This document shows, piece after piece, positions 43,373-59,845 of a stretch of DNA of 64,000 nucleotides (position 1 is its first letter; the number at the start of each line of letters is the position of its first letter). The position numbers and the translations under genes are program-made. The notes below the pieces were generated by a model. The model did no database searches. It was not told the origin of the DNA and saw only the letters and a list, made by a program, of their open reading frames with translations. The DNA is taken from IMG/VR virus record IMGVR_UViG_3300043436_004687, positions 186,001 to 250,000 of that record, one strand, 5' to 3'.

Positions 43373-43387
43373 AATTATTAATTTGTA

Positions 43388-43514: not shown

Positions 43515-45269
43515 TTATCTTAATTCTTTCAAATCAAAAGTAACAATACCATCTACATTTACAACACCATAGAATCTATTATTAACCAATTTACTTGCGT
43601 AACGTGTCATAATACCTTTAACATTTGAGAAATTCATGAAATTTGTCATTGTTGGAGTTAATTGTAAAGGAACGTAAGGAGCATAGATATAACCAGTATC
43701 TAATAAAGATTTACCTTTATGACCTATAATCATTGATCCCGCAGGAGAATAAGGGTCAGAGTATACTTGGTATCTACCAGCTAATGAACCTACTTTTTCA
43801 ATACCCATGTTAAATGTATCTTGCTCAGCAGATGCATCACTTACGTGGAAGTATTCTAAGTCATTGAAGATAGCTGCGATTTCAGAAGAAACTACAAGGA
43901 AGTTTGCACCACCTCTAAGAGTTGACTTGTGAATTTGAGCAGAAATCTGATTTACTTTAGTAATTAAAGTTTGATTCCAGTCTTTTTGAGTATAAGCATT
44001 ACTAGCTTGAGCAGTCTTTCTCCAACCATTGTAATCCCATCTCAATTGCCAAGCAGCACCTTTTCTAAGGTCTTTAAGAACCTCTCTATCAATTTCAGCA
44101 GCAACTTGTTCTGACAACATAGCTGTCAATTCTGCTTCTGCATCGATATTATGGAAAGCACTAACGTCTTGAGCAAGCTCTGGAGACCATGTAGCTCTTA
44201 ATTTTCTTTCAACAACTGATACAACAATATCTTCTAATTTGAAAGACACTTCACCCATTTCAGATTCATTCTCAAGTGTTGCGTATCTTGCCCAAGATGC
44301 TACGAATGTAGTATTTGAAGCAGTGAATGCAGATGCACCGATATAACCGTCATAAGTTTGAGTACCGTTAGCAGCAGATGGTTGAGATAAATCTAAATCT
44401 AAATACATTACACCATTAGCATCACAAATATCGTCGTATTGAACAAGTCCTTTACCGTATTTTTGAGTTACTACTCTAAATGGTACTTCAGCATTAGCCG
44501 CTACAAGAACATTTCCATTTGGATCTGTGATGTTAGCACCACCATTTTTAACTATTTTCAAAGAAGCTAAGAAAGCTTCTGAATCCATTTCATTACCATC
44601 TGGACCAGTCAATCTACCTTTATTAGTAGAAGAGAAACCTTCAACGGCAATCATTACGTTTCTTACTGTACCATCAGTAGATGCTTTCAATGTAACCCCA
44701 GCAGCGCTAGTAAAAGTACCATCAGTACCTAAAGCTACTGGTTTAGCAGTACCAGCTACAATTGTGATTTCACCTTTTGATTGGTCAAATAAACCATCAT
44801 TATAATAAATATCGTAAAGATTTTTAGCGTTGAATGTAGTTGTAGTACATGCACTTGATACACAATCTGGCAATGCTCTAGACATTGAAGTATGTGATTG
44901 AGTTACATTTCCTGAACCGTCAGTTCCAGCTACTCTATTAGATATTACTGGAACGAAGAAGAACATTTTACCAATAGGCATGTTCATCGCTTGTACTGAT
45001 ACAATTTCATTAGCCAATAATTTAGAGAAAACTCTACGTACAATTGGGAATACAACAGTCTCAAAAGAACCTGAACTATCAGCAGTTGTTGATTCGTTCA
45101 TCAAGAAAGACGCTTGATTCTCAAAAATTTGTGCAATGTTTTCTTTTACGTGACCTTTAAGACCATCTAAGAATCCTAAGCTATCCCATCTGTTTTGAAC
45201 AGCTTCACGGATAGTTTTATTGTGATTATAGGCAATATTACCTACTTGACCACTAGTTAATAAACTCAT
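43515..45269 (-). CDS. Major capsid protein (T4 gp23-like)
   Basis: VRRVF..L.A.EIVSVQ.M..P.G, RKLRATWSPELAQD...H.IDAEAEL...LSEQVAAEIDRE, YAPYVPL, GIMTRY. Confidence 0.97.
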   Translation of the reverse strand: MSLLTSGQVGNIAYNHNKTIREAVQNRWDSLGFLDGLKGHVKENIAQIFENQASFLMNESTTADSSGSFETVVFPIVRRVFSKLLANEIVSVQAMNMPIGKMFFFVPVISNRVAGTDGSGNVTQSHTSMSRALPDCVSSACTTTTFNAKNLYDIYYNDGLFDQSKGEITIVAGTAKPVALGTDGTFTSAAGVTLKASTDGTVRNVMIAVEGFSSTNKGRLTGPDGNEMDSEAFLASLKIVKNGGANITDPNGNVLVAANAEVPFRVVTQKYGKGLVQYDDICDANGVMYLDLDLSQPSAANGTQTYDGYIGASAFTASNTTFVASWARYATLENESEMGEVSFKLEDIVVSVVERKLRATWSPELAQDVSAFHNIDAEAELTAMLSEQVAAEIDREVLKDLRKGAAWQLRWDYNGWRKTAQASNAYTQKDWNQTLITKVNQISAQIHKSTLRGGANFLVVSSEIAAIFNDLEYFHVSDASAEQDTFNMGIEKVGSLAGRYQVYSDPYSPAGSMIIGHKGKSLLDTGYIYAPYVPLQLTPTMTNFMNFSNVKGIMTRYASKLVNNRFYGVVNVDGIVTFDLKELR

Positions 45270-45287
45270 ATTAATTTGTTTTAGTTT

Positions 45288-46754
45288 TTAGTTGTTAGAA
45301 CGATTTTCCATCTTATTAATAAGATCTTTATATCGTGATAATTCTGGACTTACATAAGCAGTAGATTCATTTAAATGACTTGTTGAACTGGCTGATGCTT
45401 CCTTATTTATTTTATTTTCTACTGCTTCTTTAATTGGGGTCTTGCTACCTAATTCTTTACCAATAGATTTGTATAGTGCTTTTGATTCTTCAATTGTTTT
45501 AGCTTCATTATCAAAACGCTCTAATATGTTTAATTTTTCTGTTGATGTTGTAGAATTCTCTAAAAATAATTTAGTTGCATAAGTTAAATTTTGGTTGAAT
45601 ACAACAGTTTCACCTAACGCATGTCTAAATTTTGATAAAGCTTTTTTAAATTCTTCTATCAAATCATCTTTCTTTTTTGTTTCAGCTAATAAATCAATAT
45701 ATCTTTGATTAGCTTCATCAACTGATTTTGCACCAGGGCCTTTAATCGGTGTTGCTTTACCAGGAACTCTTCTTGCTTGAGCATTCCCAACTGGAATACT
45801 TTCTTCAATAGCTTCTTCCTCATCATCACTTTCACCCATTACCATTGGACCTTCTGCTTTTGCATGTGGTGTTTTATTAGGAAATGCAGTCTCAACATCT
45901 TTTTCAACATCTGTACTTTCAGGTGCTTTAGTACCCTCAATATCTCCTGTTTCCATAGAAGTGTTTTGTAATTCCTTATCATGACCTTTACCTCTAACTA
46001 TATCTTCGGCAAGTTCATCATCATCACTCATTGCAATTTCAAATACAATACTTTCACCTAATTCATCATCATCATCTTCTTCTGAATCCAAATCTAACTC
46101 AGTTGAGTCATCTTCAATTGGAGTTTCATCATCTAAATCTGCTTCAACCTCAGTTGAATCAGCATCTAATCCACCAACTTCTGCATCTAAATCAGATGCT
46201 GCAACCGTAGGTGCCGCTGGTAAAATTGGTGCAACTGTAGGTGCTCCTTCCCCAAATTTAACATTATATTCAGAACCGCTAATAGGATCTTTAATTTTTA
46301 CCTCATTTGGTGAAACAACTTCAATTTCATCGTTATTTGCTAATTTTTTGTAAACAGATATCACATTTTCATCAGACTCACCAGTTAAATCAAATTCATA
46401 GTCTTCACTACCTTCTGCATCATAGTCCTCGCTACCTTCTGCATCTAAATCTAACTCACCAGCTTCTGCATCTAAATCATCTGCTGGTAATTCATTGTTT
46501 ACTGAATCATCAGTTGCACCTAAATCGTCAACTTCTGTTTCATCACCAATTTCTGTTTCGTCATCAACTTCTGTTTCATCTTCAACATCAGTCTCGTCAT
46601 ACATGTCTTCATTAATAGACTCTTTCACTACACTTTCAATTTCTTCTCTAGCTACGCTACGAAGTATTTCTTTTGTGTTTGTTGATATAGCTTCTTGGAT
46701 TAACTCATAATCCGCCATTGCTTCTTCAACTATCGACTTTTTTGTTTCGGTCAT
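45288..46754 (-). CDS. Prohead core/scaffolding protein
   Basis: Highly acidic low-complexity protein between protease and MCP, with many (I/L)xE motifs and a C-terminal coiled coil. Confidence 0.8.
   Translation of the reverse strand: MTETKKSIVEEAMADYELIQEAISTNTKEILRSVAREEIESVVKESINEDMYDETDVEDETEVDDETEIGDETEVDDLGATDDSVNNELPADDLDAEAGELDLDAEGSEDYDAEGSEDYEFDLTGESDENVISVYKKLANNDEIEVVSPNEVKIKDPISGSEYNVKFGEGAPTVAPILPAAPTVAASDLDAEVGGLDADSTEVEADLDDETPIEDDSTELDLDSEEDDDDELGESIVFEIAMSDDDELAEDIVRGKGHDKELQNTSMETGDIEGTKAPESTDVEKDVETAFPNKTPHAKAEGPMVMGESDDEEEAIEESIPVGNAQARRVPGKATPIKGPGAKSVDEANQRYIDLLAETKKKDDLIEEFKKALSKFRHALGETVVFNQNLTYATKLFLENSTTSTEKLNILERFDNEAKTIEESKALYKSIGKELGSKTPIKEAVENKINKEASASSTSHLNESTAYVSPELSRYKDLINKMENRSNN
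46396..46443 (-). repeat. 24-nt tandem duplication in the scaffold gene (AEGSEDY x2)
   Basis: tcatagtcttcactaccttctgca / tcatagtcctcgctaccttctgca. Confidence 0.85.
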
Positions 46755-46853
46755 TTTATTATATTTGTTTTTATTTTATTTTTAAGAAAACCTCTATTTC
46801 CTAATAAATATGTTATTATTTATAAAAAAACTTTATTTTTTAAAAAAATATTT

Positions 46854-47582
46854 TTAATTGATTAAAAAATTATTTAATTTATCAATTAATAATGATTTTT
46901 GTTTAACCTCTGATTCCATAAATGGAGTTGCTTCTTGTTGATTTGAAAACATATATGAACCAGGTGTACTAGGACTAGTAACAATATCCCAACAAATTAG
47001 CTCAAAATCTTCTTGTACCATTAATTTACCGTTTCTTTCATCTAAAGAACCAACACCCCTTGAAGAAACCCCAACTCTTATCCCTTTTCTTAAATAATTG
47101 GCTATCCTATCTCCTTCACATGATATAATACCTAAATTTATAAATCCTGGGCTCATTATAATTTCTATTTCCCCAACAAGTGTCTGACCCTCCCACCAAA
47201 TTTTTTTGATTTCGTGTGAAATTCTAGTGTTTGATATGATACTAGAATCTGGGTGATCTGATTCACCTAATGCACTTCTGGCTTCAATTAATTTTTGATA
47301 ATTGTTAGCTTCACGCATTAAAATATGTTTTGGGTATATTCGACCATTTTTATTAACCACATCATATTTTTGTAGAATAACAAATAATACTAACGGTTCT
47401 ACCATTACTTTTCCAACAGATGCTGCGTTTTCACCTAACTTCTGTATTTCACTAATAAATGGTTTATTTCGCAAGTCGTGCGGATCTATAAATCCAGAAT
47501 CACTTTCAATTAAAATACCATAACCAGTTTCATTCTTTTTTAAATATTTTAAACCAGAATTATATTTTTCGTTAATCGACAT
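46854..47582 (-). CDS. Prohead protease (T4 gp21-like)
   Basis: NKNGRIYP, ALGESDHP, SHEI, GVSSRGVGS, WDIV.SPSTPG. Confidence 0.95.
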   Translation of the reverse strand: MSINEKYNSGLKYLKKNETGYGILIESDSGFIDPHDLRNKPFISEIQKLGENAASVGKVMVEPLVLFVILQKYDVVNKNGRIYPKHILMREANNYQKLIEARSALGESDHPDSSIISNTRISHEIKKIWWEGQTLVGEIEIIMSPGFINLGIISCEGDRIANYLRKGIRVGVSSRGVGSLDERNGKLMVQEDFELICWDIVTSPSTPGSYMFSNQQEATPFMESEVKQKSLLIDKLNNFLIN

Positions 47583-47620
47583 ATATTTACTTTCCTAATA
47601 AATATAATTTTAAAATAAAA

Positions 47621-47648
47621 AAACCCTAATCATGGTAGATTAGGGTTT
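47621..47648 (-). terminator. Intrinsic terminator
   Basis: aaaccctaatc-atggta-gattagggttt with an A run on its left (U tail on the minus strand). Confidence 0.8.
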
Positions 47649-47704
47649 ATTTAATTAAAGCACATATAACGCTTGCAATTAAAAATAACACAAAAATTAT
47701 TTTT

Positions 47705-48163
47705 TTAGTCTTTAGTTTTATGGAATTTGAAGTATTGGTTTTTGTTGAATATTTCATTTATTAAGTCTTTTATTATTTCAGTCAATTCTAATTTCATAAA
47801 TTCTGAATCGATTAAATTGTTATTAATTTGAAATAAGGTTATTTGACAATTCATAAAACTTCTTCTAACAGAAGAAATGCCAGATTCTCTAATATCCAAA
47901 TCTACTATAGTCAAATCATTATAAAATTCATTTTGATTAAGATTATTAAATAAATTACTTCTAATCGATTTATCTAATTTTCTAATTATCTGACCATAAT
48001 TGAAATCTGAATCATAATTTAATACTTCTAACCAAGAATTCATTTTTATGTACACAGCAACTGGGTTTTTCGCATCCACGGTGCCAATTGAAGTTGTAAA
48101 ACTTTTAGAAATTTCTAATTTAATTTCTTTACCTCTAGCAATTTTATTCATATTTATTTTCAT
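47705..48163 (-). CDS. Hypothetical protein
   Basis: 152-aa ORF (IVDLDIRESGI). Confidence 0.7.
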   Translation of the reverse strand: MKINMNKIARGKEIKLEISKSFTTSIGTVDAKNPVAVYIKMNSWLEVLNYDSDFNYGQIIRKLDKSIRSNLFNNLNQNEFYNDLTIVDLDIRESGISSVRRSFMNCQITLFQINNNLIDSEFMKLELTEIIKDLINEIFNKNQYFKFHKTKD

Positions 48164-48203
48164 TTATTACAATATAAGTAAAAATAAAATAGAAGTCAAA
48201 TAT

Positions 48204-48707
48204 TTAATGGCTAAATTGTTTAAAATTTGAAAGAATTTTTTGAGTTATTCTTGGTTTTTTTAATAATTCCTTATTTGGTGTAATGATACAATATAAATAA
48301 CTTTCTTCTTTGGCCACTAAATAATGTTTTTGGTTTTTATTTATTGTGAACGTTTGCCCAGCTTTAAATAATTCACCAGTAATTTTGTTTAAAATAGTTC
48401 CCTTTATAACCCTATTTAACTCATATTCATTTTTATGCTCATGAGGTAATATGAAACCATCTTTTTTGTAGACAGCTAATAGTGAAGAATAGTCTTTATT
48501 TAAATCTAAACCTAAGACACTAACACCACTACCTAATTTTTCTGGTAAATCAGACCATTTATTTGAAATAAATAACAATTCTGGGATTGTTACGTCTGGA
48601 AAATTATCTGAAAAATTAATTAACTTTGTTTTTATACTATCCAAAGAATTTTTAGCTAGTATGAAAGTGTCGTTTTTGTAGTTAAAAATTTTACTAAATA
48701 AACTCAT
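48204..48707 (-). CDS. Cupin-domain protein
   Basis: LPHEH...E...VIKG, F.AGQ...I.....H. Confidence 0.8.
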   Translation of the reverse strand: MSLFSKIFNYKNDTFILAKNSLDSIKTKLINFSDNFPDVTIPELLFISNKWSDLPEKLGSGVSVLGLDLNKDYSSLLAVYKKDGFILPHEHKNEYELNRVIKGTILNKITGELFKAGQTFTINKNQKHYLVAKEESYLYCIITPNKELLKKPRITQKILSNFKQFSH

Positions 48708-48715
48708 TTTAATAG

Positions 48716-49009
48716 CTATTGTTTTTTTATGTTATTATAAAAATAAGATTTAATTTCGTTTAATGATGAAATTATCTGTTGTTTAGTTGCTTTATCGTCT
48801 TCATCCATTTTGCCAGCTTTTACTTCCCAAAGAGTTGTTATTTTAATAACTTCTTTGGATAACAAATCTTTATCGGCCTCGGCTTTAACCAATCTTTTGG
48901 CTAACCACCAAACAATAATACCCATTACAACCACTACTGGCGCTTGTTCTAATAACCAAGGGCCTATATCAATATTAGGTGTTGTATTTGTAGTTAAAAA
49001 ATTAATCAT
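48716..49009 (-). CDS. Single-TM holin-like membrane protein
   Basis: TM segment APVVVVMGIIVWWL followed by a charged coiled coil (BhlA-like layout). Confidence 0.5.
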   Translation of the reverse strand: MINFLTTNTTPNIDIGPWLLEQAPVVVVMGIIVWWLAKRLVKAEADKDLLSKEVIKITTLWEVKAGKMDEDDKATKQQIISSLNEIKSYFYNNIKKQ

Positions 49010-49775
49010 GGAATGCTTTTTTTAATTCTATTAATTTTGAAATATTAGTTTTAAAAGTTTCTTCTACATATTCAATTCCTAATAAACTTTCTTTTACATT
49101 TAATAATGTTTCTTTTTCAAGTAAATTATCATTACCAATTAACTTTTTATTAACTAATTCGGTACATTCATTTTTTAAATTAACTAATATTTCTTTTTTC
49201 TTTTCTAAATTTGATTCAAATATTGTTTTTAGAATTTTTTTTTCATAATCGTTAAGATTACTATATTTTTCGTTGAATTTTTCCACCATTAAATTCCCTA
49301 TAAAACTATTTGGTGGTATTGATTCATTTAAACTAGACTTATTTATTAAATTTGTTTTGTTATACTTGACAATATTACTTAAAGATTCAACAATAGAATC
49401 AACATTTTTATTTCTAAAAATAAGGGTTGTTATATCATCGTGTAAATCACTTCTATTATAATCACTTTCAACTAAATTGATTTTGTATTTAGAAAGAATT
49501 GATTTTAATTTTTTATTCTCATTAACAATTTCTTTTTTTGAAAAATTATTTAAAAGATTTATATTCTCTTTAATAAATTCAGAAGCTTTAAATTCATCAA
49601 TTTCATTTTTATTTTCAATATTATAATAAACATTAAATTGTGTTTTTAAAATATTACTTTCTTTTAAAGTTTTTAAAAATTCTTTGTAAATGTTTTTATG
49701 TTCACTAGTTTTATTACTTATATCTTCAACCAGTAAATTATTGAATGTAGTCTTCAATCTTCCAAAATTTTGCAT
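49002..49775 (-). CDS. Hypothetical head-module protein
   Basis: 257-aa helical ORF downstream of the portal gene. Confidence 0.7.
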   Translation of the reverse strand: MQNFGRLKTTFNNLLVEDISNKTSEHKNIYKEFLKTLKESNILKTQFNVYYNIENKNEIDEFKASEFIKENINLLNNFSKKEIVNENKKLKSILSKYKINLVESDYNRSDLHDDITTLIFRNKNVDSIVESLSNIVKYNKTNLINKSSLNESIPPNSFIGNLMVEKFNEKYSNLNDYEKKILKTIFESNLEKKKEILVNLKNECTELVNKKLIGNDNLLEKETLLNVKESLLGIEYVEETFKTNISKLIELKKAFHD

Positions 49776-49809
49776 ATTTACTTTTTATAAATAAATATGC
49801 GAAATTTAT

Positions 49810-51849
49810 TTATAAATTAAGTTTTTCATCAATTTCATTTATCATTTTATTTATAGAATCATTAATTTTTAAATTTTTGTCAAATATCTTAACAGGTTTT
49901 ATGTTTTTAACTGATTTTTTATTAAATGATTCCATCAACTTATTTTCATAAATTTGTTGATATTTGTTAACTTTTTTTGTTTGTTTATTTATCAATAATT
50001 CTTTTCTTTCAGTAAGTATGTTTTCTATTTTTTTGATACTTTCAACTGGAAATTCTTTATCAATTTCTTTTGAGGTGTCCTCCATATCAGCTTCGGTATT
50101 ATCATCCTCTAAATTAGCATCGCTTTCTTCATCACCAAACCCATCCTCATTATTAGTTTCATCGCTATTTTCTAAATCAGTTTCATCTTCATCACCAAAA
50201 TCTAAATCAGTATCACCGAATCCGCCCCCACCGAATCCACCTCCACTACCTGATGGTCCACCATCTTCTCCACCATCTTCTGGTACAACACCACCTTCTT
50301 TAGCGGCATCCATATCACCATATATTTTATCTACTTTATCATAAAGACCTGTATGTTTAATTACATTTGCGGTGTTTTCTAATTCAGCGGCAGCGGCTTT
50401 TTCCATTCTTTGTTCTAATAACATTTGTCTAATATCATCATCAGAACGACCAAGTATTTCTTTTTGTGCTTGTGTCATAGACATTGCACCATAACCATTT
50501 CCAGCATCGCTAACAGCATCTTTATACAGAGAAATTTTAGTTTGCATGTGCTCAACTTTAAGCATTTCGGCTTGTGTTGATGGATTATTTAATGTTAATG
50601 TGAAATTATCTAAATCATCTTCAAATCCTAATAAATATAAATGAATTATTGCGATTTTATTTAATTCTTGAATAATAGCTTGTTGTATTTTATTTATTGT
50701 TCTAGAAAAACGAATATCTTGTAATGCTAAATTTTTACCATCACCTGTTGCATCATCAAAATTTAAAAATGATTTTGGGGTTCTTAATGCGGTAAATAAT
50801 TTTTTCTGTAAATGTTCAATATCTTCGACAACACCTAAATTTGTTGAACCAGGTAACGTATCAATTGGATTTGGTGCATTATCACCTCTGACTGGAACGA
50901 AATAATCTTCTGTGTTATTAGCGACATTATAGCGCATATCCATTTGACCAGTTTGTGGATCGATTAAGGGTTTTTTCTTAAATCTAGCGGCAATCTTATC
51001 CATAAATGGTGCAACATCAGCCTCATCTATATTACCAACATTTATTTTAAATACTTTTCTTTCTCCAGCCCTTGTTAACCTATCAATTAACATTGCATCT
51101 TCAGCCATACATAACATTCTATGTATTTTTCTAACTTTCTCTAATATGCTAACCCCATAAGGTAATTTTCTATCATCACCTAACAACCTAAAATGCGCTA
51201 TTTGCCAAGTTCTGTATTCAATATTCTTACCTTTCCAAATAAATTTAGTTTCGTTTTCTTTTAAATTTAAATTATTGAAATTATATAAATCACCCTCTTT
51301 TCTTTCTATTTCATAATTAGGTAATTGTCTACACCCTAAAACACCTCTTTTATCATCAATATTTAATAACACAAAATTATCACCATATTTAGTTAAATTT
51401 CTTCCCCACATAGGCAAACTAGTGTGTAAATCTAATCTATTAATAAATAAATCCTTTAGAATTGATTTTACCCTCTTACTACTAGAGTATATATTTATCA
51501 TTTCCCCATTACCATTTAATGTTGAAATTTCTTCGGAAAATATGTCAAGAGTTGCTGCAATTTCTGGGTAAAATTCCATAGCTTCAAAATCTGAATAGGA
51601 GCCTATTCTACTGTTTTCGTTGAATAAAGCTTTTTGGTACATCTCATTATCAACTTTTTGCCAAGTGTTGGCTAGGTATTTATTTTGAAGTGCTTGTTTT
51701 TTAGCAAGTTCAAATTCTTCTTTAGATTGTGTTCTTAATATTTCCTTATTATCTAATTTATAATTATTAGTAACGTTATTAGGTAAGTTTACACCATCTT
51801 TCGTAAAAATATCACTTAACTTATTAAATATTGTTTTTTTTTCAGACAT
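49810..51849 (-). CDS. Portal protein (T4 gp20-like)
   Basis: YPEIAATLDI, KYGDNF, AHFRL...PYG.SILE, AEDAMLI.R..RA.ER.VF..NVGN, EDYF.PVRG, IDTLPG. Confidence 0.96.
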   Translation of the reverse strand: MSEKKTIFNKLSDIFTKDGVNLPNNVTNNYKLDNKEILRTQSKEEFELAKKQALQNKYLANTWQKVDNEMYQKALFNENSRIGSYSDFEAMEFYPEIAATLDIFSEEISTLNGNGEMINIYSSSKRVKSILKDLFINRLDLHTSLPMWGRNLTKYGDNFVLLNIDDKRGVLGCRQLPNYEIERKEGDLYNFNNLNLKENETKFIWKGKNIEYRTWQIAHFRLLGDDRKLPYGVSILEKVRKIHRMLCMAEDAMLIDRLTRAGERKVFKINVGNIDEADVAPFMDKIAARFKKKPLIDPQTGQMDMRYNVANNTEDYFVPVRGDNAPNPIDTLPGSTNLGVVEDIEHLQKKLFTALRTPKSFLNFDDATGDGKNLALQDIRFSRTINKIQQAIIQELNKIAIIHLYLLGFEDDLDNFTLTLNNPSTQAEMLKVEHMQTKISLYKDAVSDAGNGYGAMSMTQAQKEILGRSDDDIRQMLLEQRMEKAAAAELENTANVIKHTGLYDKVDKIYGDMDAAKEGGVVPEDGGEDGGPSGSGGGFGGGGFGDTDLDFGDEDETDLENSDETNNEDGFGDEESDANLEDDNTEADMEDTSKEIDKEFPVESIKKIENILTERKELLINKQTKKVNKYQQIYENKLMESFNKKSVKNIKPVKIFDKNLKINDSINKMINEIDEKLNL

Positions 51850-51903
51850 TATTTTATATTATTTCTTTTATTTAATATAACCTTTTTATTGTTTTAATAA
51901 AGA

Positions 51904-52140
51904 TTATTGGACATATCCACATTCAACATAAGCAAATCTATGTTCTTCACCATTTATTATTTGAAAATCATAAACATATGTCGTTTGATAATCCTCCCCT
52001 TGTGAGAATGGTTTTGCCTTACAACCAGTTGGTAAACCAGTTGTATAATGGGTCATTTTTTTTATTATGTTAGTCTCTGGTGACCATTTATATAAAAAAC
52101 CAGTGTATGGTTTTCTTGTAAATACTTGTTTTTCTTTCAT
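51904..52140 (-). CDS. Hypothetical protein
   Basis: 78-aa ORF between TerL and portal. Confidence 0.65.
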   Translation of the reverse strand: MKEKQVFTRKPYTGFLYKWSPETNIIKKMTHYTTGLPTGCKAKPFSQGEDYQTTYVYDFQIINGEEHRFAYVECGYVQ

Positions 52141-52151
52141 TTTTATAAATA

Positions 52152-53918
52152 TTATCTCATACTAGCAAAAAGCCAACTATAATTATTATTAGGGTCTTGA
52201 GTATTTTGGGTTACATATCTTGGAACATTATTATATTCGTTCATTAATTTCCCACCAACAGAATTAGTTTGTAATTCATTTCCACTAGTTAATCCCCAAG
52301 CATTTAACATGGCTTTGGTTTGATTTGCGGCTTTTTTAAGTTTTTTGAAAGAATTTTCTAATACCCATAAAGCCATACCAAGACACATTAATAAATCGTC
52401 ATGGTAACCCTCCATGTGATCTGGTCTACCATTTTTATAAATGAATGTTTTCATTTCAGCAGTCATTGCTTTGGATTTTATTTTTATTCCTTCTGTCCTT
52501 ACCATTATTTCTAAATTAGAAATTAGTTGTAATCTAACACCAGTCATGCAAAAACCAGCCACCTTTCCGTTAGGGTCCGAAACATCCCCCTCAACTAATT
52601 GAACATTAGCATTGCTAGAAGATTTATCATAATGCATATTAGGACAACCAAGTTCAATTAATTTTAGAACAGTTGTCAAACCAACACCAATGTTATCGAC
52701 AACAACATATGCATTGTATTTAATTCCGTATTCTTTAATTATATTAGCAAATAAATCTGGTTGTATTTTACCCTGATATTCAGCAACTTCTTCCATTGTC
52801 GTAAAATCAATAATAACAAATGCTGAACTATCACTACCATCGCCCCTAGATACATCCGCAGCCAAAATATATTCATGTCCCTCAATCGGTAATTCCCAAA
52901 CTTTAACTAATCCAGAATTACCATCAAACCATGTTTTATCTATAAATTTAGGATCTTCAACATATTTCCTATTTTGGTTATCAATATCTTCATCATCAAT
53001 TACATTACCCCCAGAACCTAAAAATGAAACGTCTAACTCTTGTGCAATTCTCCTTTTATCATTATTCATACCCTTACACATACTCACGTACCAAGATGAT
53101 GTCGGTTTATAACCCAATTTAATCATCTTTTCATAAGACTCATAAGTAAATTCAATTTCTTCAATAGGTTCTTGATCCTTCATCAACCATTTCAAATCTT
53201 TATTATATCTAGGATCTTGATACCATTTCATTTCAATTATATTATATTCATTTTCACCTTTTATTGATTGTTCGTATGTCTTATAATATAAACCATCAAA
53301 ACCATTTGGTGTACTAATTAAAATGGCTTTCCCTCCAGTACTTAAACTGGTAATTGCATTACCATATAAAATGGCTCCATTGTCAACAAAAGCTGCCTCA
53401 TCAAAAATTAAATAAGTTGGTGCATATCCACGTAGTGCATCAACAGAAGTTGCCACTGCAATTATTGTTGTCCCATTAGGTAATATTATTTCTATTTGAG
53501 AATCTTTAATAAAAATAGATTTTTTTTCTTTTTCTGGTGTGCCATAGTATTCAGCCCCCCAAACCCATCTTGGTAATTGAGCAATAAAATCTTTAATACC
53601 CTTTAAAAATTTTTTAGCTAATGTTAATTTATTTGCAATAACCACAATAATTTCTGGGTTTTCTTTACTTGCAAAACTACCTTTTATTGCCATGTATGCT
53701 TGGGTTGTTGTAGAAATACCAGCTTGTCTTGGTTTGGTGATTAAATTAAATCTAAACTTTTCGAAACAATTTATAATTTCAGCTTGTTTTTTGAATAATT
53801 TAAAAGGAACAAACCCTTCCTGAGTTTTATCAAAAGTTCGTAAATAGTTAATAATCGCATATTTTGGATCCATTAAACATTTAGCATATTCTTTAAGAAT
53901 TTCAGAATGTGTTAGCAT
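52152..53918 (-). CDS. terL: Terminase large subunit (T4 gp17-like)
   Basis: KPRQAGIST, LIFDEAAF, ISTPNG, QELDVSF; nuclease motifs AADVSRGDG.D and HDDL.M. Confidence 0.96.
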   Translation of the reverse strand: MLTHSEILKEYAKCLMDPKYAIINYLRTFDKTQEGFVPFKLFKKQAEIINCFEKFRFNLITKPRQAGISTTTQAYMAIKGSFASKENPEIIVVIANKLTLAKKFLKGIKDFIAQLPRWVWGAEYYGTPEKEKKSIFIKDSQIEIILPNGTTIIAVATSVDALRGYAPTYLIFDEAAFVDNGAILYGNAITSLSTGGKAILISTPNGFDGLYYKTYEQSIKGENEYNIIEMKWYQDPRYNKDLKWLMKDQEPIEEIEFTYESYEKMIKLGYKPTSSWYVSMCKGMNNDKRRIAQELDVSFLGSGGNVIDDEDIDNQNRKYVEDPKFIDKTWFDGNSGLVKVWELPIEGHEYILAADVSRGDGSDSSAFVIIDFTTMEEVAEYQGKIQPDLFANIIKEYGIKYNAYVVVDNIGVGLTTVLKLIELGCPNMHYDKSSSNANVQLVEGDVSDPNGKVAGFCMTGVRLQLISNLEIMVRTEGIKIKSKAMTAEMKTFIYKNGRPDHMEGYHDDLLMCLGMALWVLENSFKKLKKAANQTKAMLNAWGLTSGNELQTNSVGGKLMNEYNNVPRYVTQNTQDPNNNYSWLFASMR

Positions 53919-54007: not shown

Positions 54008-55204
54008 TTATTCCCAATCTAATGTATCTATATCGTCAATGTTTAATGAATCTTCATCACTATATTCATTTAAACTAAAATTTAAATCATCATTTATTAT
54101 ATCTTTCTTTATTCTATCACTAAGATTCATTATTATTTTTTTACCTTCTTTAGTCCCAGCCATAATCTCCCTCATAGATAAATTAAATTCTTTTACTGGT
54201 AGGGAAACTATTTCTTGGAAAATATGATGTTTTAAATGAAAATCAGCTGGTTCAATCATTTCAGTAAATTGTTCCCAAATTGGTGGTCCTAATCTTATAT
54301 CCCATGTTTCAGCTGCAATAAAATCGGCTTTCCCTAAAACATATTCACTTAATTTTAAATCTTTAGGTAATCCATGAGAAGCTAATAATTCCATAGCCCC
54401 TTTAACCAGTTCATGAATTAAAACTGGTAAAGTCATTGCCTGAGCATGTAACTTAGGTTTATCGTTTTCATTTTTAGGGAATTCTACTTTAATAATCCCA
54501 CCAGCATGTTTAGGTTCTGAATCATCAACAACTAAATATGCGTAATCAGCAGCGGTCATTAGTTTTGAATATAATTGAGGTAACTTGTGATTAATATTCA
54601 TTAATTCATCTTGAATTAAATGAAACATATGATTTGTTTTCATTGAAGCACCTTGAATCATTGTATTTATGAAACGTCTTTTATAAACTTCATCATTAGC
54701 GTTTTCAATACTAGCGTGATTATCAAAATCCATTTCTTCAATAGTTACTGGGGACGGGTTTTTTTTAATTCCTTCAATGTCGATATCTGTGGTTAATTCT
54801 GCAACTATCTCAACATCATCTTCAGACATATCGAATTCATGTCTAACTAAGTTTATTGCTAAATCTTCTAATTTTTTTTTATTTTTTACTTCGTTTTTTA
54901 TACAATCATAAATTAAATTTACTGTATTATCTCGAAGTTCATCCATATCTATATTATCAAGTTCATGAACTCTTTTATAGTTCTTTAAAACATCTAAAAA
55001 ACGCCTAGAAATCATCTTTTCTTCAAAATGCGTTTCATCACTAGCTGGAAATATTGGATGGTTCCCTAAAGAATGATTTCGTTTTCTTAATTGAATAGAT
55101 AAATTAGGGTGTATTCTTTCAGAATGTCCTGAATCATAATTTATTCTACCTTCATTAATTTTTAAATGAAGTGCTCTTTTAGCTAATTCTTTAAATTTAT
55201 CCAT
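54008..55204 (-). CDS. Hypothetical head-module protein
   Basis: 398-aa ORF (KRRFIN..IQGA, PVLIHELVKG). Confidence 0.7.
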   Translation of the reverse strand: MDKFKELAKRALHLKINEGRINYDSGHSERIHPNLSIQLRKRNHSLGNHPIFPASDETHFEEKMISRRFLDVLKNYKRVHELDNIDMDELRDNTVNLIYDCIKNEVKNKKKLEDLAINLVRHEFDMSEDDVEIVAELTTDIDIEGIKKNPSPVTIEEMDFDNHASIENANDEVYKRRFINTMIQGASMKTNHMFHLIQDELMNINHKLPQLYSKLMTAADYAYLVVDDSEPKHAGGIIKVEFPKNENDKPKLHAQAMTLPVLIHELVKGAMELLASHGLPKDLKLSEYVLGKADFIAAETWDIRLGPPIWEQFTEMIEPADFHLKHHIFQEIVSLPVKEFNLSMREIMAGTKEGKKIIMNLSDRIKKDIINDDLNFSLNEYSDEDSLNIDDIDTLDWE

Positions 55205-56072
55205 TTTTTATTTTAATAAATTCTTCTAACTTTTTTTTACTTATAATTGGTTTAACTGTTTCGTTCATTTTTTTTGATAATTCTTCCCAATCTTGTTCAG
55301 TTAACTCTTCCTCATTTGTTTTAACGCAATTATTTACTCTCTTCCCATTATCAATTTTAGTACCAACTTTTTTATAACCAGCCCAACATTTTTTTTCGTT
55401 TAAAGAATCGCCATTTAAATCTTCTAAATTTAAATCATATTCATTTAAAACTTCTTCAATTTTTGAGATTGGTGTGGTTTCTTTATATTTAAAATATAAA
55501 TTTAAAATACTCTCTTTCAGATCGATATTAAAATTACCAGCCTTTTGTGCTAATTTATGTAATTCATTTAAATCAAATGTTTTTTCCTCGTTTGGAGTTT
55601 CATTTATATCATTAGTTTGAAGTGAATTATTTTTATGTTTTTTTAAAGCAGCTGTATACAATCTTTTTATTAATTTTAAATAAGGTATACCATCAAACTC
55701 CATATTTCTTTTTAATATGGTCTCACTTTCAATATCATTTTTATAAACACTTTTCGATTTTACTAATAACGAACCATTTTTATATAAAATCGGATAATAA
55801 ATATAAGGTTCTTCCCAGGTACTTGATTTATCAATTACAGGTATTGGATCTCCATCGGAATCAATTGCTGAGGTGATTAATTGATTTAAATCAAGTACAA
55901 ATTTTTCTATCTTAGGATTATTTTTCGCTGGTGCTTCGTTTATTTCAGCCTCATCGACAACCTTAACTATATCGTCTTTTTTTAATTTTGGTAAAAGAGC
56001 ATCAACGTTTTTAGCGTTTGCCATGAACTTCGCTTCTAAGATAGCTTTTATAAATGTTTTTTTTGTATTCAT
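55197..56072 (-). CDS. Hypothetical protein with CW.GY...G.K...VNNCV microdomain
   Basis: 291-aa ORF with several (I/L)NE motifs. Confidence 0.7.
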   Translation of the reverse strand: MNTKKTFIKAILEAKFMANAKNVDALLPKLKKDDIVKVVDEAEINEAPAKNNPKIEKFVLDLNQLITSAIDSDGDPIPVIDKSSTWEEPYIYYPILYKNGSLLVKSKSVYKNDIESETILKRNMEFDGIPYLKLIKRLYTAALKKHKNNSLQTNDINETPNEEKTFDLNELHKLAQKAGNFNIDLKESILNLYFKYKETTPISKIEEVLNEYDLNLEDLNGDSLNEKKCWAGYKKVGTKIDNGKRVNNCVKTNEEELTEQDWEELSKKMNETVKPIISKKKLEEFIKIKNG

Positions 56073-56073
56073 T

Positions 56074-56466
56074 TTATTTTTTATATTTTAATGTTAAGTC
56101 TCTTTCATATAATAAATTATTAACTTGTTCCATAGTAACCCCAAAATGAATTATTAATCTATGTTCTGGGTAAGTAGTATGTGAACTTATATCTTCATAT
56201 ACTAAAGGTATTATCCCATCAATAGCATCCCAAAGACAAAAACAACTACTATCTTGCGCAAATAAAAAATCAATATCAGTTTCAAGTGTCCCAATTTTTT
56301 TTATGAAATTTTTATATGGCGGTTCAGGTCTACCACATGAAGGAATAGCGTCCCAATCTTCACCATCAACATCTTTTTTAACGTCTGAAAATATGAATTC
56401 CAAAATATTCTCACCATTATAATTTACACCAAGATTGTTAACATATATTAAATATAACTCATCCAT
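56074..56466 (-). CDS. Hypothetical protein
   Basis: 130-aa ORF. Confidence 0.7.
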   Translation of the reverse strand: MDELYLIYVNNLGVNYNGENILEFIFSDVKKDVDGEDWDAIPSCGRPEPPYKNFIKKIGTLETDIDFLFAQDSSCFCLWDAIDGIIPLVYEDISSHTTYPEHRLIIHFGVTMEQVNNLLYERDLTLKYKK

Positions 56467-56467
56467 A

Positions 56468-57945
56468 TTAATTTTGGGCTTTTGGTTCTGGGTTAGGCCT
56501 TGGGCTTATTTTCCAAGGTTTTTGTCTCCTAGTAGGAACAATATTTGGTGTTGTGGTTGGTTTAGTTATTGGTTGTACTGTTGTTTCTTCAGTAGCAATT
56601 TCATTAATTCTTTTCATAATAATTGATTTAAAACTATTTTCTGCAAATATAGTTTTATTTTCTTTTATATTCAAATTATTTAACTTTTTATTTTCACTAT
56701 CATCAACCCCTAATTTAGCATCAACAAACACTTGTTTATGATCTTTTGGTAAGATATTAATACCACCATTTGGCCAGCAACCAGATGGGTTAACCGACTC
56801 TTTACCCGTTTCATGTATTACATTTTCTTCTGTTGGTTGTTCATTACCATCTTCCGTTTCTTCTCCATTTATCGAATCGCCAAAATCATCATTTTTAGGT
56901 GTGTCATTCGAACCAGAAGTTTCAACTTTTTTTATAATATCGTTTTGATCTTCTTCCGACATATCAGCAGTATGTGTAGCCGAAATAACCGAATTAATTG
57001 CAAATTTTTCTAATTCTAAATCTGCATTACCTTGTTTTTCAGTATAATCTCTAATTGTTTGACCTAGTTTCCCAGAAAGTTGTTGAATGTATTTCACTGG
57101 GTCGCTATCAATATCAGCATCTACACCAGCATCAAATGGTTCTTTATCAAATGGTAAATTATCGGCTTCTTTTTCAGGTTCTTGAGTTGGGTTTTCATCA
57201 TTTAAACCTTCAAAACCATCTGATTGGTTATCAATAGGTGGTTCTTCATTTTTATTTTGATTATCTAACTTTAATTTATATTTAACTTCAGTTAAACTTT
57301 TTTTTTTAAATTATCAATTAAAATATTTTTTTCTGATTCTGATAGAGACTCGATTAACGTTTTAAATTGTTTGTTTCTCAATTCATTTTCACTAATAGCA
57401 TTTATAGCTTTAGTTATCTTTAATCTATTATTTTGAATATAATTTTCAACTACGGGTTCATCTACTAACATTTTATCAATTGCTTTATCAGTCTCTGACA
57501 TTTCAACTTCATCAATATTTTCATCTTCCTCTTCTTGATCTTCTTCAGCTCTATAGCTATGATACTCTATTAAATTATCATTTTCCAGTATATTTGTTGA
57601 ATTGGTTTTTCCTAAAGATTCCGCTAAACTAATAAACATTAAATTTAAACCTTTAGAGGCTTTTGAATAAGTAGGATATACTTTTTCTCTATAATTAGCC
57701 AAACCCCCAATATAATTAAAATCACTTTCATTTATATTGTTAACCTTATCAGTAGTTTTAATAAAATATTCGTGTTTTTCTCTTACGATACCATAAATCT
57801 TACCATCTGGACCACGTTTAGTTAACTCAACGGCTGATTTATTAAGCTTATTCTCGCTAATAGTAGTTACACCCATTAAAGATTTAGTTCTCTCTAATAA
57901 TTCATAACCTTTTAAGGTATTTGGATTTATATTATTTCTTTGCAT
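56468..57945 (-). CDS. Head-module protein, probably one ~492-aa product via -1 frameshift joining 57292-57945 to the frame of 56468-57097
   Basis: Upstream ORF ends TTA AAA AAA AAA GTT TAA (A10 tract, 57298-57307). The -1 frame is open from the tract (SLTEVKYKLKLD...PFDAGVDADIDSDPVKYIQQ) into the downstream ORF. Confidence 0.7.
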
Positions 57946-57958
57946 ATTTAAAATTTAA

Positions 57959-58219
57959 TTAATCATTTAAAAAGGGTAAACCAGTTTTTATATCTATTGG
58001 TCCACTACCAGAATAAAATATTCTGCTACCAACTAAAAATACATTGTTAGGTGAGGCAGAAGTACATGAGGTTACTAAAATATCTAATTTCATAGGTGGA
58101 ACAATAGTTATTGTTGTACCATTCAAAGTAACAGAAGTACTAGTGCTAGTAAAAATTTGATTATAAGTAAAAGCTGAAAAATTAGCTACTGATAAACTAT
58201 GGATTACATTTCCCATCAT
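57959..58219 (-). CDS. Small hypothetical (beta-rich) protein
   Basis: 86-aa ORF with upstream TATTTAT motif (58229-58235). Confidence 0.6.
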   Translation of the reverse strand: MMGNVIHSLSVANFSAFTYNQIFTSTSTSVTLNGTTITIVPPMKLDILVTSCTSASPNNVFLVGSRIFYSGSGPIDIKTGLPFLND

Positions 58220-58242
58220 ATTTTATTGATAAATATATTGAT

Positions 58243-58581
58243 TTAAGATAAAAACCAAATATAATACACTAATGCACCAACTAATCCTGACAAAGTACTA
58301 ACAATAATATCTTTATTAGATTCAAAAACTTCATTTTCAGTTTTATTAGCTCCAAAAAAAACTCCTTGACACCATTCCCATGCAAATGATAACCAAAGTA
58401 CTGTAAATGTTGATACAAAAATTTTAAACCATCCTGGAACACCATCAAAAGTAGGGTTAAAAAGCCAAAATGATATAATCCCTAATATTATTCCTATTGG
58501 GATATGTAAATGCCATTTATTACCAATTATTTTACTTAATGAAGTGAAATCAGTTAAAATTGAAATTAATATTTTTTTCAT
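58243..58581 (-). CDS. Membrane protein (about 3 TM segments)
   Basis: Hydrophobic segments; K.LH, WE..Q, KDII pattern (VanZ/YfiM-like). Confidence 0.65.
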   Translation of the reverse strand: MKKILISILTDFTSLSKIIGNKWHLHIPIGIILGIISFWLFNPTFDGVPGWFKIFVSTFTVLWLSFAWEWCQGVFFGANKTENEVFESNKDIIVSTLSGLVGALVYYIWFLS

Positions 58582-59321: not shown

Positions 59322-59753
59322 CTAATTACCTTTTATTTCAAAGTATTTATTAATTATTTCTTGTAGTGTTTTTACTTGATGTTCTTCTAGGTTTGTATAT
59401 TCCTTATGAAAATAAGTCATAGTATCCATTTGTTTTATCATCAATTGAGTAATCCCTTTTAAAGCATTTTCTTTTACTTTATTTATTTCTTCTTTTATTA
59501 AATTAGTATCAGCGTTTTCTAACTTAATAAAAGAATACGGTTTAATATATTGAATAAAAGCCTTCCCAACACTTTCAGCCATTTCAAATTTAAGATAGTC
59601 AGTTTTTTTAACGTTTGGGTAGTCATAATTTCCACCATTTGTGAAAATTATATTAAGTTTATTAGTTTCTTTATCATATGTTGATGATAAAATCATTGAA
59701 GATTTATAAAGTACTTTAATTACATCTTCTTGTTCATTTCTAGTAATAATCAT
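59322..59753 (-). CDS. KTSC-domain protein
   Basis: SSMI....YD...L.I.F.NGG.Y.Y.NV...Y..F..AES.GK.F...IK; likely start ATG 59753. Confidence 0.85.
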   Translation of the reverse strand: MIITRNEQEDVIKVLYKSSMILSSTYDKETNKLNIIFTNGGNYDYPNVKKTDYLKFEMAESVGKAFIQYIKPYSFIKLENADTNLIKEEINKVKENALKGITQLMIKQMDTMTYFHKEYTNLEEHQVKTLQEIINKYFEIKGN

Positions 59754-59783
59754 TTTGTAAGTATTTGATTTTAAATTATATTT

Positions 59784-59845
59784 CAAATATAAACAAAATA
59801 ATAATAAAAACAAGTTGTTTATTAAAATTATTTTTAATATCTTTG
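59784..59845. promoter_or_regulatory. Divergent Bacteroidota-type -7 elements for the KTSC and Clp genes
   Basis: TATATTTG on - (59784-59791) and TATCTTTG on + (59838-59845). Confidence 0.6.

What the first reader, a model, noticed from the sequence alone, without database searches (positions are those of the whole stretch)
56468..57945. Probable programmed -1 frameshift or transcriptional slippage on an A10 tract in a head-module gene
Seen: the 217-aa ORF ends ...AAT TTA AAA AAA AAA GTT TAA. The -1 frame is stop-free from the A tract for 67 codons and continues in frame into the 209-aa ORF, whose only called start is a mid-sequence GTG. The 67 bridging codons are acidic and Pro-rich like the rest of the product and fill an otherwise unexplained 194-nt gap. 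Established: A_AAA_AAA and T_TTA_AAA are slippery heptamers, and runs of 9 or more A promote polymerase slippage. Phage frameshifts are best known in tail chaperones and capsid genes, not here. Inference: two isoforms (217 and ~492 aa) at a set ratio.
Basis: partly seen in the sequence, partly recalled or inferred. Interest (0 to 1): 0.62.

Follow-up and report, generated by a model that had tools for sequence, protein, structure and literature searches.

The report
Conserved A10 recoding site in phage gene
A run of ten A's splits one gene of an uncultured 340-kb T4-like lake phage into two reading frames, and because nearly every relative in hundreds of metagenome contigs keeps the same run at the same spot, it is a genuine programmed slippage signal that makes a short and a long version of one protein, not a sequencing error.

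Summary
On the minus strand a 217-aa ORF (57945-57292) ends AAT TTA AAA AAA AAA GTT TAA. The -1 frame opens at 57310, just before the A10 tract (57307-57298), and runs 280 codons to 56468.

The tract is real. Two independent lake-metagenome assemblies carry it unchanged.

It is also conserved. In 90 of 93 related IMG/VR loci (59 distinct junctions, about 50% protein identity) the N and C parts lie in a -1 relation, joined on an uninterrupted A9-A11 run (A10 in 52). Of 118 homologous N-ORFs, 111 end in KKK plus 1-5 residues. No AAG Lys codon occurs in 180 tract codons, against 18-41% elsewhere in the same genes.

Both other frames close within a few codons, and no conserved RNA stimulator was found. 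Some relatives keep the tract with the long form in the zero frame. A marine clade has a second such site.

Best reading: programmed recoding gives 217-aa (25 kDa) and 492-aa (56 kDa) isoforms, most likely by RNA-polymerase slippage. Ribosomal -1 slippage is not excluded, and no RNA data exist.

The protein's function is unknown. It is probably a prohead-associated protein. This is a new member of a known kind of recoding.

The parts
57292..57945 (-). Zero-frame ORF (217 aa, P0001), the short isoform. It ends ...NLKKKV, with the TAA stop at 57294-57292.
   Evidence: Of 118 homologs, 111 end in KKK plus 1-5 residues.
57568..57945 (-). Conserved N-terminal domain, residues 1-126. Its folded core is a beta-sheet plus helix at about residues 38-111.
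   Evidence: Alignments A1 and A2. AlphaFold model with pLDDT 86-93 over residues 41-110. No Pfam, PHROG or PDB match.
57298..57307 (-). The A10 tract, the recoding site. In the zero frame it reads (TT)A AAA AAA AAA. In the -1 frame it reads AAA AAA AAA A(GT).
   Evidence: Conserved as A9-A11 in 59 of 59 distinct junctions. AAG is absent from all 180 tract codons.
57311..57316 (-). TGA TAA in the -1 frame directly upstream of the tract. They confine entry into the -1 frame to the tract itself.
   Evidence: In the relatives the -1 frame opens from 2 nt inside the tract to 36 nt upstream of it.
57288..57290 (-). TGA stop of the +1 frame. A transcript with one A fewer would read ...NLKKKFN and stop, so two of the three frames give a short product.
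   Evidence: In the relatives the +1-frame stop lies 1-25 nt after the tract.
56468..57310 (-). The -1-frame ORF (280 codons plus stop, P0002). It is the C-terminal extension of the long isoform, 492 aa in all. It includes the 209-aa ORF called from the GTG at 57097.
   Evidence: Its first 71 codons hold no ATG, GTG or TTG, yet they match the relatives from residue 1.
57287..57295 (-). L-T-E in the -1 frame, right after KKKS. This is a conserved [LIV]-x-E motif followed by K-Y-K-L-K. It is a candidate cleavage site for the T4-type prohead protease (inference).
   Evidence: The motif is present in 60 of 60 junctions and in the continuous relatives.
56915..57163 (-). Conserved core of the C part, P0002 residues 50-132. 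It comprises the PFDxEPFDAG motif and a three-helix unit carrying GK[LI]GQ...EKFAINS...DIIKK.
   Evidence: Alignment A3 invariant columns. Model helices at 71-92, 98-112 and 119-132.
56074..56466 (-). Downstream 130-aa gene. It starts 2 nt after the stop of the long isoform and is syntenic in 89 related loci.
46854..47582 (-). Context: T4 gp21-type prohead protease (Peptidase_S77) in the same co-directional block.
   Evidence: Pfam E 1.5e-22; phrog_207 E 1.7e-37.
43515..53918 (-). Context: large terminase (52152-53918), portal (49810-51849) and gp23-type major capsid protein (43515-45269).

Best explanation
This is one gene of an uncultured 340-kb T4-like phage, read in two ways at a conserved run of ten A's.

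Standard decoding gives a 217-aa, 25-kDa protein that stops one codon after the run. A fixed fraction of expression events passes into the -1 frame on the run. [quoted passage not shown]

The most likely route is slippage of the host's multi-subunit RNA polymerase on the A10/T10 hybrid. It would add one A (or remove two) in part of the transcripts. Transcripts with the other lengths all end within a few codons and give the short form.

The run itself is the selected element. It persists whether the short or the long form lies in the zero frame.

Shown: the anatomy, the reality of the tract, and its conservation and nucleotide-level constraint. Inferred: that both isoforms are made, the polymerase as the slipping machine, and the function. 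The function is probably that of a prohead-associated protein processed at the [LIV]xE next to the site.
For: 1. Reality of the tract. Independent contigs span it unchanged. Twenty groups of near-identical contigs from different samples show no length variation.

2. Conservation. In 90 of 93 IMG/VR loci the C part lies at -1 relative to the N part, and the junction always falls on an A9-A11 run. Among the 59 distinct junctions, 52 are A10, 4 are A9 and 3 are A11, while the flanks have diverged to about 50% protein identity. Of 118 N-ORFs from JGI, ENA, Logan, NCBI and Tara, 111 end in KKK plus 1-5 residues.

3. The -1 sequence right after the run is conserved protein ([LIV]xE, KYKLK, PFDxEPFDAG). 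No start codon precedes it in any of 60 genes, so it cannot be made by separate initiation.

4. Constraint at the nucleotide level. AAG makes up 18% of Lys codons in these genes and 41% at two conserved Lys a few codons downstream. It is absent from all 180 tract codons. The run is never shorter than 9, whereas a ribosomal heptamer needs only 7.

5. The phase of the run in the zero frame varies: phase 3 in 50 junctions, phase 1 in 6 and phase 2 in 3.

6. Both non-productive frames stop 1-25 nt after the run.

7. No conserved structure was found upstream or downstream. Mean z-scores are -0.6 and -0.5.

8. Continuous relatives L089, L095 and L097 (the last seen on 5 contigs) keep A10 with the long form in the zero frame. 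The usual KKKV-stop lies in their +1 frame and a stop follows soon in their -1 frame. Such forms arose at least 3 times inside the split clade. The tract-less forms L012 and L013 are an outgroup.

9. A marine clade has a second A10 with the same -1 layout at another domain boundary.

10. Long runs are otherwise avoided. The window has 1 A10 against 15.5 expected, and the 340-kb genome has 2 runs of 10 or more.

11. No Rpb1-type polymerase gene was found in the phage genome. This fits T4-style use of the host enzyme. That enzyme is known to slip on runs of more than 7 A (PMC3711429, PMC5009743).
Against: No RNA or protein data exist. All runs that hold the sequence are DNA assemblies. Neither the long product nor A11 transcripts have been seen.

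The tract also contains perfect A_AAA_AAA heptamers. A ribosomal -1 slip would give the identical protein.

Every split relative needs -1 and none needs +1. That fits a strictly -1 ribosomal event as well as it fits an insertion-biased polymerase or plain common descent.

The host is unknown, and so are its polymerase and tRNA-Lys. The polymerase search would miss very divergent phage enzymes.

The function is not established. There is no Pfam, PHROG or PDB match, and the best structural Z-score is 5.6.
Confidence: 0.55

Rival explanations
1. Programmed recoding with the same two isoforms, but made by the ribosome. It would slip -1 in tandem on A_AAA_AAA, or slide on consecutive AAA codons, on an unedited A10 mRNA.
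For: In the window the zero frame reads TT-A AAA AAA AAA, which holds two overlapping A_AAA_AAA heptamers. All 90 split relatives need exactly -1. Several lineages have GAAGG or GGAG-like sequences 5-15 nt upstream, or a 6-bp hairpin starting right after the run. A_AAA_AAA and A_AAA_AAG are known frameshift heptamers (PMC3711429).
Against: A heptamer needs 7 A's, yet no junction has fewer than 9. The classical A_AAA_AAG is never used: AAG is absent from all 180 tract codons although it is common nearby. The phase of the run varies. No stimulator is conserved, the hairpins have zero spacing and occur in a minority, and mean z-scores are about -0.5. Relatives with the long form in the zero frame still keep the whole run.
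Confidence: 0.3
2. A hypermutable contingency locus. The phage or host DNA polymerase slips on the run during replication, so the population holds ON (fused) and OFF (split) alleles, and no recoding happens at expression.
For: Poly-A runs also slip in replication (PMC3711429). Fused alleles with one more A exist: L096 and L098 have A11 in the phase where their relatives have A10. Of 115 listed hits to a full-length query, 43 are continuous.
Against: Tract length does not vary in 20 groups of near-identical contigs from different samples or in the contigs laid on the window. Continuous forms L089, L095 and L097 differ by a base in the flank, not by run length, and keep A10. The split form dominates over about 50% protein divergence. 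A switch drifting between states would not produce that.
Confidence: 0.06
3. A homopolymer sequencing or assembly error, or a recent frameshift mutation, in what is really one continuous ORF.
For: A10 runs are error-prone. Distant relatives L012 and L013 are continuous ORFs.
Against: The same -1 split on the same run occurs in 90 loci and 59 distinct sequences from dozens of studies. Two further assemblies of this same phage carry A10. A zero-frame stop and a +1-frame stop lie conserved just after the run.
Confidence: 0.02
4. Two separate genes. The C part would be translated on its own by initiation or re-initiation after the stop of the 217-aa ORF.
For: Gene callers list C-only proteins that start at internal GTG or ATG codons.
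Against: In the window the first 71 codons of the -1 frame have no ATG, GTG or TTG, yet they include invariant residues. In 60 of 60 genes no start codon precedes the conserved [LIV]xE..KYKLK stretch. Continuous relatives join both parts in one ORF.
Confidence: 0.03

Closest known systems
dnaX of Thermus thermophilus (A9, transcriptional slippage) and the two-ORF dnaX genes with A10 described by Antonov et al. 2013 (PMC3711429; PMC5009743)
   Same: An uninterrupted A9-A10 run inside a gene. Stops lie close by in the non-productive frames. Two products share an N-terminus. Within one family, some members have the long form in the zero frame and others are split into two ORFs.
   Different: The protein is unrelated: a phage protein of unknown function, not the clamp-loader subunit. 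The organism is an uncultured jumbo phage. Slippage has not been measured here.
E. coli dnaX, a -1 ribosomal frameshift on A_AAA_AAG with an upstream SD-like element and a downstream hairpin
   Same: A lysine-codon slippery site that gives short and long forms.
   Different: Here no AAG-ended heptamer is used, no conserved SD-like element or hairpin was found, and the run is 9 or longer in all members.
IS-element orfA-orfB transposases, and the Shigella type III secretion genes (spa13 and others) that use RNA-polymerase slippage on A runs (PMC5009743)
   Same: A -1 relation of two overlapping ORFs joined on an A run. The fusion product is made from a fraction of the transcripts.
   Different: A different gene class. 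Here the site lies in a virion-module gene and is conserved over hundreds of phage contigs.
Phage lambda gpG/gpGT, other tail-chaperone frameshifts, and T7 gene 10A/10B
   Same: Phage morphogenesis genes that make two N-terminally identical proteins at a set ratio by moving into the -1 frame near the end of the short ORF.
   Different: Those use short heptamers such as G_GGA_AAG and act at the ribosome. They are tail chaperones or the capsid protein itself. This gene is unrelated, lies upstream of the terminase, and uses a long homopolymer.
Citrobacter rodentium tssM (PMC4256274) and the poly-A methyltransferase of Campylobacter phage CPt10 (PMC2853527)
   Same: A gene interrupted in a poly-A run, with the full-length product made or proposed to be made by transcriptional slippage.
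   Different: Those are lineage-specific interruptions read as rescue. Here the interruption is the conserved state of a large family.

Membership tests
Programmed transcriptional realignment (RNA-polymerase slippage) site | Uninterrupted A or T run of about 8-9 or more, the length of the RNA-DNA hybrid | tested here: met
   A10 in the window. All 59 distinct junctions have A9-A11.
Programmed transcriptional realignment (RNA-polymerase slippage) site | Selection on the run as nucleotides, beyond what the protein or a heptamer needs | tested here: met
   AAG is absent from all 180 tract codons, against 18% gene-wide and 41% at nearby conserved Lys. The tract is kept in both configurations.
Programmed transcriptional realignment (RNA-polymerase slippage) site | Transcripts heterogeneous in run length while the DNA is homogeneous | not testable with these tools
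   Only DNA assemblies hold the sequence; there are no RNA runs. The DNA consensus is homogeneous.
Programmed -1 ribosomal frameshift site | X_XXY_YYZ heptamer in the zero-frame phase | tested here: met
   The reading (TT)A AAA AAA AAA contains A_AAA_AAA. Any phase of a run of 9 or more satisfies it.
Programmed -1 ribosomal frameshift site | Conserved stimulator: a downstream hairpin or pseudoknot 5-9 nt away, or an upstream SD-like element | tested here: not met
   Folding 50 nt upstream and 60 nt downstream in 60 genes gives mean z-scores of -0.6 and -0.5. The hairpins found are lineage-specific and start at spacing 0. A stimulator is not strictly required, so this lowers the option but does not exclude it.
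Programmed -1 ribosomal frameshift site | Trans-frame protein with the junction peptide, made from unedited mRNA | not testable with these tools
   No proteomic or RNA data.
Phase-variable contingency locus (replication slippage) | Run-length polymorphism among otherwise near-identical genomes | tested here: not met
   None of 20 groups with identical 80-nt flanks varies. Contigs from X3 and X6 are identical to the window. Only assembly consensus was seen, not raw reads.
Substrate of a T4 gp21-type prohead protease (prohead core or internal protein) | Encoded with a Peptidase_S77 protease in the head module | tested here: met
   The protease lies at 46854-47582, in the same strand block as the terminase, portal and capsid genes.
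Substrate of a T4 gp21-type prohead protease (prohead core or internal protein) | Conserved (L/I)-x-E cleavage motif. The consensus is recalled from the T4 literature and was not checked in a paper here. | tested here: inconclusive
   [LIV]xE follows the tract in 60 of 60 genes and in continuous relatives. Such a short motif in an acidic protein is weak evidence, and cleavage itself was not tested.
Substrate of a T4 gp21-type prohead protease (prohead core or internal protein) | Presence in proheads or virions | not testable with these tools
   No cultured member. The phage-record collection gave no match.

The most novel reading that the evidence does not exclude
An abundant clade of uncultured freshwater and marine jumbo T4-like phages uses A10 runs as a reusable isoform generator driven by RNA-polymerase slippage. 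The runs sit at domain boundaries of one morphogenesis-module protein: one site in most members, two in a marine clade. Lineages have switched repeatedly between a short-form and a long-form zero frame. As far as the papers searched here show, this would be the first programmed transcriptional slippage in a tailed-phage virion-module gene. It would fix the ratio of an N-terminal domain to a C-terminal cargo that a gp21-type protease separates at the adjacent [LIV]xE.
Probability: 0.4. Interest if true: 0.72.

Novelty: new member of a known kind. Interest (0 to 1): 0.6.

Why it matters
Gene callers split this gene into a 'hypothetical protein' that ends in KKK and a second ORF with a false internal start. 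They do so in hundreds of metagenomic phage contigs. Recognising the site corrects that annotation.

The site also adds a large, deeply conserved example of homopolymer recoding to a short list (dnaX, IS elements, type III and type VI secretion genes), and this one is in phage morphogenesis.

The family contains both configurations: short or long form in the zero frame, with one or two sites. It is therefore a natural experiment on how a slippage signal is kept while the frames around it change.

It gives a simple rule, an A run of 9 or more joining two conserved frames, for finding more cases in AT-rich phages. These genomes otherwise avoid such runs.

Tried and rejected
- Family scans gave nothing for either part or for longer relatives. 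This covers Pfam and PHROGs and profile searches of PDB sequences.

- Structure searches with the N-part model gave no function. Foldseek against the PDB had no hit at E <= 0.001. VIA-align gave a best Z of 5.6 on short pieces. BFVD matched only uncharacterized phage proteins of 542 and 409 aa. The ESM Atlas returned only hypothetical viral clusters.

- The C-part model is mostly disordered, with pLDDT 57. It was not searched.

- The phage-record collection has no DNA or protein match. The large terminase is only about 30% identical to T4-like cyanophages and Microcystis phage Mel-JY01, and Mel-JY01's neighbourhood gave no annotation to borrow.

- No RNA run holds the sequence, so slippage could not be seen directly. 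Only Logan contigs could be laid, not raw reads.

- The other three A9 runs in the window (49235, 51834, 54872) were checked for hidden frames and have none.

- Searching the genome for a T7-type RNA polymerase was uninformative because the control genomes did not ring either.

- The fused 492-aa protein was not sent to the fold or profile tools, because it is not a letter-for-letter translation of the DNA. The two parts were handled separately.

- The large representative-protein search and the complex prediction were not used. Neither would have changed the verdict.

- The ideas of a sequencing error, two independent genes and phase variation were considered and are scored under the rival explanations.

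Full report
**What is in the sequence.**
The genes here lie on the minus strand. An ATG-started ORF of 217 codons (57945-57292, P0001) ends ...AAT TTA AAA AAA AAA GTT TAA. The run of ten A's is 57307-57298.

In the -1 frame the same bases read TGA TAA TTT AAA AAA AAA AGT TTA ACT GAA. That frame is closed until the base before the run, opens on it, and stays open for 280 codons to 56468 (P0002). The 209-aa ORF listed from a GTG at 57097 is only the tail of this frame. The 71 codons before the GTG hold no ATG, GTG or TTG.

The +1 frame stops at 57290-57288. Of the three frames leaving the run, two end within two or three codons and one gives a long product.

From base composition, 71 open codons have a probability of about 0.002.

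The products would be 217 aa (25.0 kDa, pI 5.15) and 492 aa (55.7 kDa, pI 4.75), joined as ...NLKKK-SLTEVKYKLKL.

**Is the run real?**
The window is part of a complete 339,635-bp virus record with terminal repeats and 26% GC.

Eleven lake-water metagenome runs hold the stretch, all as DNA assemblies. Four runs other than the likely source were laid on 56000-58500. Contigs from two of them span the run with no difference and no gap: X3 covers 56674-57658 and X6 covers 56737-57556.

Long runs are avoided in this genome:
- The window has one A10 against 15.5 +/- 6.2 in dinucleotide shuffles.
- It has five A9 matches against 38.9.
- The whole genome has two runs of 10 or more. The other is an intergenic A11.

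This run is the only one at which a long ORF in one frame meets a long ORF in another.

**Relatives.**
Neither part matches Pfam, PHROGs or the phage-record collection. IMG/VR holds many relatives:
- 13 loci were found with the two parts as queries.
- 317 were found with an alignment of the N-terminal domain, and the best 80 were fetched.

In 90 of these 93 loci the conserved core of the C part lies in the -1 frame relative to the N domain. The switch always falls on an uninterrupted A run.

After removing duplicates there are 59 distinct junctions:

| Feature | Values |
|---|---|
| Run length | A10 in 52, A9 in 4, A11 in 3 |
| Phase of the first A in the zero frame | third position in 50, first in 6, second in 3 |
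| Zero-frame stop | begins 1-24 nt after the run |
| +1-frame stop | 1-25 nt after the run |
| Opening of the -1 frame | from 2 nt inside the run to 36 nt before it |

The flanks are diverged, at about 50% protein identity.

In the larger protein collection, 118 N-ORF homologs were found, all unnamed. Of these, 111 end in KKK plus one to five residues.

Twenty groups of contigs from different samples share identical 80-nt flanks. None varies in run length. A sequencing error, a recent mutation, or frequent switching at the DNA level cannot produce this pattern.

**The -1 sequence is protein.**
Directly after the run, every member encodes [LIV]-x-E, then K-[YF]-x-[LIV]-K. After a Pro/Ala-rich or acidic linker comes PFDxEPFDAG and a helical unit with GK[LI]GQ...EKFAINS...DIIKK.

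None of 60 genes has a start codon before the first of these motifs. These residues can therefore be made only by ribosomes that began in the N-ORF.

Distant relatives L012 and L013 carry both parts in one ORF, without any run.

**The run is selected as nucleotides.**
Lys is encoded by AAG in 18% of cases across these genes. At the two conserved Lys of the KYKLK motif a few codons downstream, the share is 41%. None of the 180 Lys codons of the run is AAG.

**Configurations.**
A search with a full-length continuous relative found 43 proteins, among 115 listed, that have both parts in one ORF. Most of them still show KKK at the junction.

The DNA of six such relatives was read:
- L089, L095 and L097 have A10 one phase over, so the long form is in the zero frame. 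The +1 frame then reads KKKV-stop, which is the usual tail of the short form. The -1 frame stops after a few codons. L097's protein occurs on five contigs.
- L096 and L098 have A11 in the usual phase.
- L100, the sixth, is described with the marine clade below.

On a tree of the N domain, the tract-less forms are an outgroup (support 100/100). The continuous forms that keep the tract are scattered inside the split clade. Well-supported branches force at least three changes.

The run therefore outlives changes in which isoform is the default. This is what dnaX shows, with Thermus dnaX against the two-ORF dnaX genes that carry A10 (PMC3711429).

A marine clade (L098 from an NCBI assembly, and L100/L101 from Tara) has the first run in frame, A11 in L098 and A10 in L100. 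It has a second A10 at the end of the called ORF. From there the -1 frame runs about 180 more codons into a domain that L002 and L011 carry in frame.

**Mechanism.**
Three machines can slip on such a run: the RNA polymerase, the ribosome and the DNA polymerase (PMC3711429).

DNA-level switching is disfavoured by the stable consensus.

Between the other two, several points favour the polymerase:
- The run is never shorter than 9, although a ribosomal heptamer needs 7.
- The efficient A_AAA_AAG form is never used.
- The phase of the run varies.
- No stimulatory structure is conserved. Folding 50 nt upstream and 60 nt downstream of 60 junctions gives mean z-scores of -0.6 and -0.5. The small hairpins seen in some lineages start at the first base after the run.
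- Both other frames are closed at once. This matters if transcripts of several lengths are made.

No Rpb1-type polymerase gene was found in the phage. This fits T4-style dependence on the host enzyme, though divergent phage polymerases would escape the test.

Two points speak against a firm call. The run holds perfect A_AAA_AAA heptamers. Also, every split member needs -1 and none needs +1.

I put programmed recoding of either kind at about 0.9. Polymerase slippage as the main route is at about 0.55, and a ribosomal route at about 0.3.

**Function.**
The gene heads a co-directional block, in this order:
- this gene;
- a 130-aa gene that starts 2 nt after its stop (syntenic in 89 loci);
- a 291-aa gene;
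- a 398-aa gene (syntenic in 73 loci);
- the large terminase;
- the portal;
- three small genes;
- a T4 gp21-type prohead protease (Peptidase_S77);
- a 488-aa gene;
- the gp23-type major capsid protein.

The N part is predicted to have these elements:
- a compact sheet-plus-helix domain with pLDDT about 90 over residues 41-110;
- a disordered acidic stretch;
- two helices that end at KKK.

The C part is predicted to be mostly disordered, with a three-helix core and a Pro-rich tail.

Nothing in the PDB, BFVD or the ESM Atlas gives a function.

The conserved [LIV]xE next to the run resembles the (L/I)xE sites cut by the T4 prohead protease. That consensus is my recollection of the T4 literature, not a test made here. 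It suggests a prohead-associated protein whose two halves are separated on maturation. This is inference only.

**Comparison and novelty.**
The logic is that of dnaX, IS transposases, the Shigella secretion genes and tssM (PMC5009743, PMC3711429, PMC4256274). It also matches the set-ratio isoforms of phage tail chaperones and T7 capsid protein.

The kind is known. The gene family, its breadth, its switching configuration and the second site are new, as far as four literature searches and the papers read could show.

No other genetic code was used.

Noticed in passing
L098:3501-5650 (NCBI GCA_012263365.1, 262,683-bp contig); L100:236-2300; L101: Marine relatives carry two runs in this gene. The first is in frame (A11 in L098, A10 in L100). 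The second is an A10 at the end of the called ORF (...KKKLK-stop). From it the -1 frame continues about 180 codons into a domain that is in frame in L002 and L011. The separately called 162-aa 'gene' downstream is that extension.
   Followed up: partly
window 55197-56072 (-), residues about 220-256; also inside the C parts of L004, L007, L026, L059, L071, L072, L084: A small Cys-containing motif, CWxGYKxVGxKxxNGKxVxNCV, occurs in the window's 291-aa ORF and as an insert in the C parts of longer homologs. It matches several PHROGs of unknown function. It looks like a mobile mini-domain among these head-module proteins.
   Followed up: partly
whole genome G000; window 49235-49243, 51834-51842, 54872-54880: A/T runs of 9 or more are strongly depleted. 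The window has 5 A9 matches against 38.9 expected. The 340-kb genome has 21 runs of 9 or more and only 2 of 10 or more. The three A9 runs in the window lie in frame on the sense strand of head genes: the 257-aa ORF, codon 3 of the portal, and the 398-aa ORF. None hides a second frame.
   Followed up: yes
genome G000:C1:61052-61062 (outside the window): The only other run of 10 or more in the genome is an A11 with no long ORF on either side. It is apparently intergenic.
   Followed up: no
window 41678-43390 (-): A 570-aa HNH/homing-endonuclease-like ORF lies directly downstream of the major capsid gene. It matches phrog_3339 and phrog_559, with ROS/MucR and REase_MTES_1575 domains.
   Followed up: no
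window 59872-62349 (+) and 59322-59813 (-): A full-length ClpB/Hsp104-type double AAA+ ATPase (825 aa) and a KTSC-domain protein sit next to this block. Relatives L097 and L098 show the same ClpB plus KTSC neighbourhood.
   Followed up: no
window 48204-48707 (-): A weak cupin-like ORF (Cupin_2, E 3.8e-5, below the Pfam cut-off) lies between the portal and prohead-protease genes.
   Followed up: no
window 38906-38977 (+): A tRNA-Met (CAT) gene.
   Followed up: no
L004 and L006 C parts (about 1,090-aa fused products); L003-L009: The C part varies from 276 to more than 700 residues through inserted modules. These include a repeated GESNNYMFW...DGHxWAxxH unit and a KFxVYVKN...RRKSFRARHxC...YWSC unit. 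None is in Pfam.
   Followed up: partly
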